Position numbers and translations under genes: made by a program. DNA of 63,867 nt, the filler included, from Octopus bimaculoides (lineage: Eukaryota): the NCBI RefSeq assembly GCF_001194135.2. It is 4 parts of 4 records of this genome, joined end to end, with 100 filler letters (N's around TTAATTAATTAA, not from the genome) between each part and the next. Parts side by side here need not be neighbours in the genome. Positions count along the whole stretch, not along the records: positions 1 to 23,802 come from NC_069005.1; 3 more parts are not named here. The stretch is one strand, 5' to 3'. Positions 14,956 through 15,012 of the stretch are shown here, piece by piece. Under the pieces are notes generated by a model. It made no database searches. It saw only the letters and a program-made list of their open reading frames with translations, and was not told the DNA's origin. Position 1 is the stretch's first letter. The number at the start of each line of letters is the position of its first letter.

Positions 14956-15012
14956 TTATTGGGTACAACACATGTTTCGACCCGTTCTGCGTCTCTTCAG
15001 GTACATCAATAA
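14956..15012 (-). ncRNA. Minimal type I hammerhead ribozyme (Penelope-type)
   Basis: Minus strand TTATTG-AT-GTAC CTGAAGA GAC-GCAGAACGG-GTC GAA ACATGTGT T GTAC-C-CAATAA: intact core, stem II GAC/GTC, very short stem III, GUU triplet, stem I 4+6 bp. Confidence 0.72.

What the first reader, a model, noticed from the sequence alone, without database searches (positions are those of the whole stretch)
14956..15012. Hammerhead ribozyme in sense orientation inside the putative 3' UTR of protease SP2
Seen: intact core CUGAAGA/GAAA, stem II GAC/GUC, stem I GUAC/GUAC extended by UUAUUG/CAAUAA, and a GUU triplet with predicted cleavage between 14967 and 14966. It lies ~230 nt after the SP2 stop (15230), and the first AATAAA on that strand is downstream of it (14888-14883). 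Known: Penelope-like elements carry minimal type I hammerheads with very short palindromic stem III that cleave mainly as dimers; rodent Clec2 mRNAs have 3' UTR hammerheads that reduce expression. Inference: a retroelement-derived ribozyme could cut the protease mRNA before its poly(A) signal, silencing or tuning this paralog and possibly preceding its pseudogenisation.
Basis: partly seen in the sequence, partly recalled or inferred. Interest (0 to 1): 0.75.

Follow-up and report, generated by a model that had tools for sequence, protein, structure and literature searches.

The report
Lone hammerhead ribozyme motif beside octopus protease
A complete-looking but slightly damaged self-cutting RNA motif (hammerhead ribozyme) lies just downstream of a digestive-type protease gene in an octopus genome; it is inherited and shared with Octopus vulgaris, most likely an old retroelement leftover, and nothing here shows that it controls the gene.

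Summary
On the minus strand, 15012-14956 carries every element of a type I hammerhead, with predicted cleavage between 14967 and 14966. Rfam Hammerhead_1 scores it 25.1 bits, below the 34-bit gathering cut-off. A descriptor scan expects about 0.007-0.014 such motifs by chance per window.

The window is Octopus DNA. The motif lies 218 nt after the stop codon of a chymotrypsin-like gene (SP2), in the spacer between two convergent protease paralogs. The same motif sits at the orthologous site in O. vulgaris, with a perfect 5-bp helix II (29.6 bits). It also occurs twice in a duplicated copy of that spacer.

- The window copy has a G·G mismatch in helix II.
- The three substitutions among the four copies each break a base pair; none is compensated.
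- Conservation is not significantly above the flanks.
- No second copy, Penelope-like element ORF or independent dispersed copy was found.
- Transcript ends could not be tested.
- SP2 in this assembly already carries a 23-nt frameshifting deletion, while the O. vulgaris ortholog, which has the better ribozyme, is intact.

Most likely this is a solitary relic of a hammerhead-bearing retroelement: a new member of a known kind, of modest interest.

The parts
14956..15012 (-). Whole type I hammerhead motif (57 nt), including distal helix I
   Evidence: Sequence read. Rfam Hammerhead_1 at 25.1 bits over 15004..14963. Only descriptor hit in the window.
15007..15012 (-). Distal helix I, 5' strand UUAUUG. 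It pairs with 14961-14956 (CAAUAA). The internal loop is AU (15006-15005) opposite C (14962).
   Evidence: G15007 is C in all O. vulgaris copies, which lose that pair.
15001..15004 (-). Proximal helix I, 5' strand GUAC. It pairs with GUAC at 14966-14963.
14994..15000 (-). Catalytic core box C3-U4-G5-A6-A7-G8-A9 (CUGAAGA)
14979..14993 (-). Helix II and loop 2: GACGC-AGAAC-GGGUC. The G10.1:C11.1 pair is present. G14990·G14982 is a mismatch in this copy; O. vulgaris has C there, giving 5 bp.
   Evidence: Non-canonical pair flagged in the Rfam alignment. O. vulgaris copies.
14975..14978 (-). Core G12-A13-A14 plus A15.1 (GAAA)
14968..14975 (-). Helix III: A15.1:U16.1 and C15.2:G16.2 closing AUGU. 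The 8-nt stretch ACAUGUGU is self-complementary with two G·U pairs, so it could form an extended helix III in a dimer.
   Evidence: Sequence. Architecture as described for metazoan hammerheads in PMC4209133 and PMC7229834.
14966..14967 (-). Predicted scissile bond, after U17 (14967) and before G1.1 (14966)
   Evidence: Follows from hammerhead numbering applied. Not tested experimentally.
14798..15111 (-). 314-nt unique segment (35% GC) that carries the hammerhead. It is bounded by a (TA)n tract at about 15129-15146 and a (CA)n tract at 14731-14793. It is a candidate retroelement remnant.
   Evidence: Orthologous at 91.6% to L001 27110-27429 and 90.9% to L004 36532-36215. GC content. Whole-segment fold z = -1.18.
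15230..15379 (-). SP2 last exon (GDSGGPLYCP...WIQTHL, stop TGA at 15232-15230)
   Evidence: 87% identical overall to O. vulgaris chymotrypsin-1-like P0001.
15562..15684 (-). SP2 penultimate exon, with a 23-nt deletion (junction about 15569/15568). The deletion removes the ...GGASTC(H/Q) stretch and shifts the frame, so the last exon would read W-stop.
   Evidence: Alignments with SP1 and with both O. vulgaris orthologs. Intact protein P0001.
12194..12343 (+). Last exon of the convergent paralog SP1. Its AATAAA is at 12422-12427, 79 nt after the stop. There is no hammerhead in its 3' flank.

Best explanation
This is a genuine hammerhead by descent, now a solitary and decaying relic.

Shown:
- The 57-nt minus-strand motif has the full type I hammerhead anatomy.
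- It lies in the roughly 2.9-kb spacer (plus a 340-N assembly gap) between two convergent chymotrypsin-like genes of an Octopus genome, 218 nt past the SP2 stop.
- It is inherited. The orthologous site in O. vulgaris has the same motif with a perfect 5-bp helix II.

Inferred:
- It entered as part of a hammerhead-bearing retroelement: a 5'-truncated Penelope-like element pseudo-LTR, or a monomer of a non-LTR retrozyme.
- The element landed in microsatellite DNA, between (TA)n and (CA)n, before the split of the two octopus lineages (13-33 My according to PMC13282606).
- In its parent element the ribozyme would have cut multimeric retroelement transcripts, probably as a dimer through its short self-complementary helix III.
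- At this locus there is one copy only, and the window copy has acquired a G·G mismatch in helix II. If it is transcribed, it should cleave weakly or not at all.
- Any effect on SP2 mRNA would be incidental. SP2 in this assembly is already disabled by an unrelated 23-nt deletion.
For: - Anatomy and coordinates.
- Rarity by chance: 0.007-0.014 per window.
- The O. vulgaris copy scores 29.6 bits. Its E of 9.2e-5 covers 1.8 kb x 4227 families. Rescaled by me to one family and a 2.7-Gb genome, that is about 0.03 chance hits.
- Orthology: collinear alignment from the SP2 stop through the motif to the (CA)n tract, 91% identity.
- The G10.1:C11.1 pair and the palindromic helix III are the features PMC4209133 lists as non-random hallmarks of metazoan hammerheads.
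- That paper also reports that most such motifs occur as single copies, probably from truncated Penelope-like elements, and that single motifs show no detectable cleavage.
- Penelope-like elements are abundant in octopus genomes, with a burst about 56 My ago (PMC13282606, PMC8967140). They favour microsatellite targets (PMC8557442).
- Retrozyme monomers are common. The few that overlap exons sit mostly in 3' UTRs (bioRxiv 10.64898/2026.07.22.740005).
- Decay signals: all 3 substitutions among the 4 copies break a pair and none is compensatory. Divergence in the motif (2/57) is not significantly below that of the flanks (Fisher p = 0.13 in the comparison free of the indel artefact; the L001 comparison, p = 0.05, is inflated by an 8-nt indel counted at the motif's end; by hand, about 5.9 substitutions expected across three copies, P about 0.07).
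Against: - No link to a retroelement was shown directly. There is no RT/GIY-YIG ORF in the window or in six loci.
- There is no tandem unit and no target-site duplication, because the flanks are microsatellites.
- The only other copies lie in a segmental duplicate of the same spacer in O. vulgaris.
- All copies score below the Rfam gathering threshold.
- The somewhat low divergence inside the motif (2 observed against about 6 expected) could reflect weak constraint, which would favour a functional reading.
- Genome-wide copy number could not be measured with the collections on hand.
Confidence: 0.55

Rival explanations
1. One reading: a working 3'-UTR hammerhead. SP2 pre-mRNA runs through the motif to the AATAAA at 14888-14883. 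Self-cleavage at 14967/14966 removes the poly(A) signal or tail and lowers expression of the protease, as in rodent Clec2 mRNAs.
For: - Sense orientation, 218 nt after the stop and upstream of the first canonical AATAAA and ATTAAA.
- Retained at the orthologous site for at least 13 My, with only 2 of 57 differences against 7-10% in the flanks.
- The two O. vulgaris full copies are identical in the motif while their flanks differ by 6.4%.
- A 2-bp helix III with a tetraloop is reported as compatible with efficient monomer cleavage in invertebrate retrozymes (PMC7229834).
Against: - There is no transcript evidence.
- Variant poly(A) hexamers lie upstream of the motif, and the paralog SP1 polyadenylates (by signal) 79 nt after its stop.
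- In O. vulgaris an ~850-nt transposon and long microsatellites push the motif to 1.29 kb after the stop.
- The window copy has a helix II mismatch, and none of the changes is compensatory.
- The conservation excess is not significant.
- Other paralog 3' flanks lack the motif.
- SP2 in this window is frameshifted, so there is nothing left to tune.
Confidence: 0.12
2. A chance look-alike. An AT-rich 2.7-Gb genome is expected to contain many sequences that satisfy a relaxed hammerhead descriptor. This one was never a ribozyme and is shared with O. vulgaris simply because the whole spacer is orthologous.
For: - All copies are below the Rfam gathering score.
- Relaxed-descriptor hits extrapolate to about 1,500 per 2.7 Gb.
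- There is no covariation.
- Conservation is no higher than expected for neutral orthologous DNA.
- No related copies turned up elsewhere.
- The MFE fold is not the hammerhead.
Against: - None of 7 random hits in 12 Mb had a 5-bp helix II or a 5-bp or longer distal helix I. The O. vulgaris form has the first, and both forms have the second.
- The 29.6-bit match corresponds to about 0.03 chance hits per genome for this one family (my rescaling).
- G10.1:C11.1, the palindromic helix III and a loop 2 resembling the Rfam consensus (CCCA-AA) were not part of the descriptor.
Confidence: 0.2
3. Part of a currently active retrozyme or Penelope-like element that still produces self-cleaved or circular RNA from this locus.
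For: The segment's size (314 nt) and GC content (35%) fall in the range of non-LTR retrozyme monomers (PMC7229834). In O. vulgaris L004 two hammerhead segments lie head to head, an arrangement described for Penelope-like element insertions (PMC4209133, PMC8557442).
Against: - There is a single hammerhead in the window and no tandem repeat.
- There is no RT/endonuclease ORF.
- The segment is fixed and orthologous between species at about 9% divergence.
- Its fold is not unusually stable (z = -1.18).
- The L004 pair includes a copy with a broken helix III and sits in a duplication that also copied an unrelated transposon.
Confidence: 0.03

Closest known systems
Canonical metazoan type I hammerheads of non-LTR retrozymes and satellite repeats (Rfam RF00163; Schistosoma, newt, mussel and coral examples)
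   Same: - Type I topology and intact core.
- G10.1:C11.1 pair.
- Helix II of 4-5 bp with an A-rich loop resembling the Rfam consensus.
- Helix I interrupted by an internal loop.
- Helix III of 2 bp capped by a 4-nt loop.
- Host DNA with low GC content.
   Different: - Single copy rather than a tandem array.
- Proximal helix I is only 4 bp, against the usual 6.
- Below the Rfam gathering score.
- Helix II mismatch in the window copy.
- No evidence of circular RNA.
Minimal hammerheads (min-HHRs) in the pseudo-LTRs of Penelope-like elements (Cervera and de la Pena 2014, PMC4209133)
   Same: - Short helix I next to the core.
- Very short, palindromic helix III that suggests action as a dimer.
- Mostly found as solitary motifs scattered in metazoan genomes.
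- The host genome is rich in Penelope elements.
- Microsatellite flanks.
   Different: [quoted passage not shown]
- Helix II is 5 bp rather than 6-8 bp.
- No adjacent RT/GIY-YIG ORF or second pseudo-LTR.
- Family membership in the genome is untested.
Hammerheads embedded in mRNA 3' UTRs (rodent Clec2 genes, Martick et al. 2008; cited from my own knowledge and in PMC4209133)
   Same: Lies downstream of a stop codon, in sense orientation, ahead of a canonical poly(A) signal. It could in principle lower expression by cutting off the tail.
   Different: - Clec2 ribozymes are discontinuous, with the two halves hundreds of nucleotides apart, and were shown to act in cells.
- This motif is contiguous.
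- Its presence in the transcript is unproven.
- The host gene copy is frameshifted.

Membership tests
Hammerhead ribozyme, type I (Rfam RF00163) | Conserved core: C3 U4 G5 A6 N7 G8 A9, G12 A13 A14, the A15.1:U16.1 pair, and H17 (not G) at the cleavage site | tested here: met
   CUGAAGA at 15000-14994, GAAA at 14978-14975, U16.1 at 14968, U17 at 14967.
Hammerhead ribozyme, type I (Rfam RF00163) | Three helices around the core, with helix I open (5' and 3' ends in helix I) | tested here: met
   Helix I has 4 bp plus 6 bp distal, helix II has 3 bp + mismatch + 1 bp (5 bp in O. vulgaris), and helix III has 2 bp.
Hammerhead ribozyme, type I (Rfam RF00163) | Score at or above the curated gathering threshold (34 bits) | tested here: not met
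   25.1 bits in the window. 29.6 and 22.5 bits for O. vulgaris copies. No gathering-level hit.
Hammerhead ribozyme, type I (Rfam RF00163) | Helices supported by compensatory changes among relatives | tested here: inconclusive
   There are 4 copies and 3 distinct sequences. 14 of 17 pairs are invariant, 3 pairs are each broken in at least one of the three distinct sequences, and none has a change on both sides.
Hammerhead ribozyme, type I (Rfam RF00163) | Site-specific self-cleavage giving 2',3'-cyclic phosphate and 5'-OH ends | not testable with these tools
   Needs a transcription and cleavage assay.
Hammerhead ribozyme, type I (Rfam RF00163) | Loop 1 - loop 2 tertiary contact needed for activity at physiological Mg2+ | not testable with these tools
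   An internal loop AU/C in helix I and an A-rich loop 2 exist. Their geometry (4-bp proximal helix I) cannot be judged from sequence.
Penelope-like element min-HHR (PMC4209133) | Located in a pseudo-LTR flanking an RT + GIY-YIG ORF, or demonstrably a truncated copy of such an element | tested here: not met
   No such ORF in the window. The RT ORFs in the loci matched only the RVT_1 reverse-transcriptase family, with no GIY-YIG endonuclease domain, and I read them as LINE-type. Derivation from a truncated copy could not be tested without a repeat library.
Penelope-like element min-HHR (PMC4209133) | [quoted passage not shown] | tested here: not met
   A9 is followed directly by G10.1. Helix II is at most 5 bp.
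Penelope-like element min-HHR (PMC4209133) | Palindromic 15.2-16.2 and loop 3, allowing an extended helix III in a dimer | tested here: met
   ACAUGUGU pairs with itself over 8 positions, including two G·U pairs.
Penelope-like element min-HHR (PMC4209133) | Member of a multi-copy consensus family within the genome | not testable with these tools
   No octopus genome can be searched at the DNA level. About 208 kb of octopod DNA (the window plus six loci) holds only the orthologous and duplicated copies. Metagenome, viral and protein-space searches were empty.
Non-LTR retrozyme (PMC7229834) | Tandem repeats of about 170-400-bp units, each with a type I hammerhead | tested here: not met
   One hammerhead and one copy of the 314-nt segment in the window. 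It could still be a solitary monomer.
Non-LTR retrozyme (PMC7229834) | Low GC content (<45-50%) and unit size of a few hundred nt | tested here: met
   314 nt between microsatellites, 35% GC.
Non-LTR retrozyme (PMC7229834) | [quoted passage not shown] | not testable with these tools
   No RNA data were on hand.
3'-UTR regulatory hammerhead (Clec2 type) | Lies within the mature or primary transcript, upstream of the poly(A) site actually used | not testable with these tools
   Signals only: canonical AATAAA and ATTAAA lie downstream, and the variant hexamers TATAAA, AGTAAA and AATATA lie upstream.
3'-UTR regulatory hammerhead (Clec2 type) | Retained in orthologs, with conservation above neutral flanks | tested here: inconclusive
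   Present in O. vulgaris. Divergence is 2/57 in the motif against 7-10% in the flanks, p = 0.05-0.13. It is absent from the paralog flanks examined.

The most novel reading that the evidence does not exclude
An ancient retroelement hammerhead has been domesticated in octopods as a cis-acting switch in the 3' region of a chymotrypsin-like protease gene. It would have been kept nearly unchanged for more than 13 My and through a local duplication. It would cut read-through or long-UTR transcripts and so tune protease output. This would be the first regulatory mRNA hammerhead in a mollusc.
Probability: 0.07. Interest if true: 0.6.

Novelty: new member of a known kind. Interest (0 to 1): 0.25.

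Why it matters
Type I hammerheads are already known to be scattered by the thousand through many invertebrate genomes, mostly as debris of Penelope-like elements and retrozymes. One more solitary copy is not surprising. My literature searches found no paper describing hammerheads in cephalopods. This locus therefore documents the motif class in Octopus. It also offers a natural pair for testing how much one helix II pair matters: the O. vulgaris copy has a perfect helix II and the window copy has a G·G mismatch. The finding would matter more only if transcripts of the protease gene are shown to be cut there. That would add a second animal lineage to the very short list of mRNA-embedded hammerheads.

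Tried and rejected
1. Rfam at gathering thresholds on the window and on four loci gave no hammerhead. Only E-value mode shows it.
2. Plain MFE folding does not give the hammerhead fold, and the 71-nt stretch is not unusually stable (z = -0.68). I judged this uninformative for a minimal ribozyme.
3. Search for further copies:
   - BLAST of the 314-341-nt segment against the window and six octopod loci found only the orthologous and duplicated copies.
   - Exact and degenerate pattern scans of metagenome contigs and viral contigs found nothing.
   - An exact look-up of the 40-aa ORF in the segment found nothing.
   - A protein-space search with peptides translated across the segment, meant to catch spurious ORFs on genome or transcript contigs, found nothing.
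   These are weak negatives, because no octopus genome can be searched as DNA here.
4. Search for a parent element: Pfam scans of ORFs in the window and loci found only RVT_1 reverse-transcriptase matches (read as LINE-type, no GIY-YIG domain) and a C2H2 fragment.
5. I tried to define an insertion by aligning the SP1 and SP2 3' flanks beyond the first ~65 nt. There is no significant similarity (z <= 1.6), so no 'empty site' can be shown.
6. Test for a retrozyme-like, highly structured RNA: the whole-segment fold has z = -1.18, which is not supportive.
7. Constraint test: there are too few substitutions to separate selection from drift.
8. The bacterial promoter and terminator scan is irrelevant for a eukaryote and found nothing.

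Full report
**1. What is in the sequence**

Read on the minus strand, 15012..14956 is UUAUUG AU GUAC CUGAAGA GACGC AGAAC GGGUC GAAA CAUGUG U U|GUAC C CAAUAA. In standard hammerhead numbering this gives:
- the core boxes C3-A9 (15000-14994) and G12-A14 (14978-14976);
- the A15.1:U16.1 pair (14975:14968);
- U17 (14967) as the cleavage nucleotide;
- a G10.1:C11.1 pair closing helix II.

Helix I is open, so the topology is type I. It has 4 proximal pairs (GUAC/GUAC), a small AU/C internal loop and 6 distal pairs. Helix III has two pairs closing AUGU. The 8-nt stretch ACAUGUGU is self-complementary, so two copies could form an extended helix III. Helix II has only three clean pairs, then a G·G mismatch (14990·14982), then a C:G pair.

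**2. Is it more than chance?**

- Rfam at curated thresholds reports nothing in the window.
- With E-value reporting, Hammerhead_1 (RF00163) aligns full length to 15004..14963 at 25.1 bits. The gathering score is 34, and E = 8.8e-4 for 601 nt and all families.
- A descriptor of my own (helices of at least 4/3/2 bp around the fixed core) finds exactly this site in the window. It expects 0.0067 hits per window in dinucleotide shuffles and 0.014 in 12 Mb of Markov sequence.
- None of the 7 random hits had a 5-bp helix II or a distal helix I.
- Extrapolated to a 2.7-Gb genome, the relaxed descriptor would give about 1,500 chance hits. The window copy alone is therefore not proof.
- The O. vulgaris copy (section 3) scores 29.6 bits. 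Rescaled to this one family and a whole genome, that is about 0.03 expected chance hits.
- The MFE fold is not the hammerhead. That is common for minimal hammerheads and carries little weight.

**3. Where it sits**

The window is Octopus DNA. A conceptual SP2 C-terminal protein is 87% identical to O. vulgaris 'chymotrypsin-1-like' P0001. Non-coding DNA is about 91% identical to O. vulgaris chromosome OX597838.1. The window is a draft assembly with N gaps, probably from another Octopus species such as O. bimaculoides; that assignment is an inference.

Two S1-protease paralogs converge:
- SP1 is on the plus strand. Its last exon is 12194-12343 and its AATAAA is at 12422-12427.
- SP2 is on the minus strand. 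Its last exon is 15379-15230.

The hammerhead lies in the spacer between them, in a 314-nt unique stretch (35% GC). This stretch is bounded by (TA)n on the SP2 side and (CA)n on the far side.

**4. Relatives**

In the orthologous O. vulgaris locus (L001) the same motif is at 27209-27265, in the same orientation relative to the SP2 ortholog. It lies 1.29 kb after the stop, because long microsatellites and an ~850-nt element with terminal inverted repeats have accumulated in the (TA)n tract.

It differs from the window copy at two positions:
- C instead of G at 14990, which makes helix II a perfect 5-bp stem.
- C instead of G at 15007, which loses one distal helix I pair.

O. vulgaris has a second copy of the whole spacer about 46 kb away, next to the SP1 ortholog (L004). 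That duplicate contains the same inserted element. It holds a full copy of the segment (36532-36215) and, head to head with it, a 129-nt inverted partial copy (37280-37408). In the partial copy the hammerhead has G16.2 changed to A, which breaks helix III.

These copies are segmental duplicates, not independent transpositions. No other hammerhead-like motif, even with a looser descriptor, occurs in the six loci, which hold about 184 kb of O. vulgaris, O. sinensis and Argonauta DNA. This includes the 3' flanks of four other paralogs.

**5. Signs of selection or decay**

- Among the four copies only three positions vary. All three lie in helices, each breaks a pair, and none is compensated.
- Between the window and the O. 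vulgaris copies the motif differs at 2 of 57 positions. The flanks differ at 7-10% (Fisher p = 0.13; the L001 comparison, p = 0.05, is inflated by an 8-nt indel counted at the motif's edge).
- Over the three full copies I expect about 5.9 substitutions in 57 nt at the flank rate and see 2 (P about 0.07, counted by hand).
- This is a hint of constraint at most.

**6. The host gene**

The SP2 penultimate exon in the window lacks 23 nt that are present in SP1 and in both O. vulgaris orthologs. The deletion removes the segment before GDSGGP, including the conserved Cys. It also shifts the frame, so the last exon would read W-stop. Unless this is an assembly error, SP2 is a pseudogene here.

The SP2 exon with the catalytic His falls in the N gap 19610-19848. 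The O. vulgaris ortholog has the penultimate exon intact and carries the better-paired ribozyme.

**7. Does SP2 mRNA contain the motif?**

This cannot be decided here.
- For: the first canonical AATAAA and ATTAAA lie downstream of the motif.
- Against: TATAAA (twice), AGTAAA and AATATA lie between the stop and the motif. SP1 has its AATAAA 79 nt after its stop.
- The SP1 and SP2 flanks are alignable for only about 65 nt after the stop. After that they show no significant similarity, so an insertion into an ancestral UTR cannot be demonstrated.
- Look-ups for ORFs of the segment in the protein and contig collections, which could have exposed transcript contigs, were empty.

**8. Origin**

The literature read here shows the following:
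- Metazoan type I hammerheads typically have a 1-2-bp helix III with a small palindromic loop. They are thought to act as dimers. Most occur as solitary motifs derived from truncated Penelope-like elements, and single motifs cleave poorly or not at all (PMC4209133).
- Canonical type I hammerheads also populate non-LTR retrozymes of a few hundred nt with low GC content (PMC7229834).
- Retrozymes appear to derive from the pseudo-LTRs of Penelope-like elements. The few copies that overlap exons are mostly in 3' UTRs (bioRxiv 10.64898/2026.07.22.740005).
- Penelope-like elements prefer microsatellite targets (PMC8557442).
- Octopus genomes are rich in Penelope elements, with a burst about 56 My ago. 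The O. vulgaris / O. bimaculoides split is dated at 13-33 My (PMC13282606, PMC8967140).

The anatomy, size, GC content, microsatellite flanks and age of this segment fit that picture. The link itself is inferred. I found no RT/GIY-YIG ORF, no tandem unit, no unusually stable fold of the segment and no dispersed relatives. The motif also lacks two hallmarks of Penelope-like element min-HHRs: the extra nucleotide after A9 and a 6-8-bp helix II. It looks more like the canonical or retrozyme type.

**9. Verdict**

The most likely account is a solitary, slowly decaying relic of a hammerhead-bearing retroelement, fixed in the spacer between two convergent protease genes before the two octopus lineages split (confidence about 0.55).

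The rivals are:
- a chance look-alike (0.20);
- a working 3'-UTR ribozyme (0.12);
- a still-active element (0.03).

This is a new member of a known kind. It becomes interesting only if transcripts are shown to be cut at 14967/14966 or at the O. vulgaris equivalent.

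Noticed in passing
window 15562-15684 (minus), junction about 15569/15568: The SP2 penultimate exon carries a 23-nt deletion relative to SP1 and to both O. vulgaris orthologs. It shifts the frame and removes the conserved Cys before GDSGGP. SP2 therefore looks like a pseudogene in this assembly, unless the deletion is an assembly error.
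   Followed up: yes
window 19610-19848 (N gap): The SP2 exon encoding the catalytic His (…LTAAHC) is present in O. vulgaris at about L001 16282. By synteny it maps into this assembly gap. The annotated O. vulgaris model P0001 (193 aa) also omits that exon.
   Followed up: partly
L001 ~26486-27046 and L004 ~36595-37105: An ~850-nt element with terminal inverted repeats (CCGTAAATCCTCGAGTATA...) sits in the (TA)n tract between the SP2 stop and the hammerhead in O. vulgaris. It is absent from the window. It is present in both copies of the duplicated spacer, so it predates that duplication.
   Followed up: partly
L004 36377-36433 (minus) and 37308-37364 (plus): Two hammerhead-bearing segments lie head to head in O. 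vulgaris. One is a 129-nt partial copy with a broken helix III. The arrangement resembles the inverted structures described for Penelope-like element insertions, but it may simply be a by-product of the segmental duplication.
   Followed up: partly
window 6653, 8836, 11746, 13642, 19021 (about 95-230 nt each): There are five copies of a SINE-like repeat (TAAGGCGGCGAGCTGGCAGAA...), with many more copies in the O. vulgaris loci.
   Followed up: no
window 6183-6292: A tandem array of a 22-nt unit (GACGTTGATGTCACAAGACCGT), about five copies at 77-95% identity to the reference copy.
   Followed up: no
window 17961-18302 (plus): An ORF with weak, sub-threshold C2H2 zinc-finger matches lies between assembly gaps inside an SP2 intron. 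It is probably a transposon fragment.
   Followed up: partly
window 14000-14731: This stretch next to the (CA)n tract has no counterpart in either O. vulgaris copy of the spacer. At the same place O. vulgaris L001 has a 4.3-kb insertion encoding a reverse transcriptase (RVT_1 match; ORF 31471-29363) that I read as a LINE. This boundary has seen lineage-specific turnover.
   Followed up: partly
window 23380-23598 (plus): This is the likely first exon (signal peptide) of a third chymotrypsin-like gene. It resembles the N-terminus of O. vulgaris P0004 and is transcribed divergently from SP2.
   Followed up: no
window 5601-5732 and 5892-6023: A 132-nt direct repeat at 84% identity, spaced 291 nt apart. 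Its nature is unknown.
   Followed up: no
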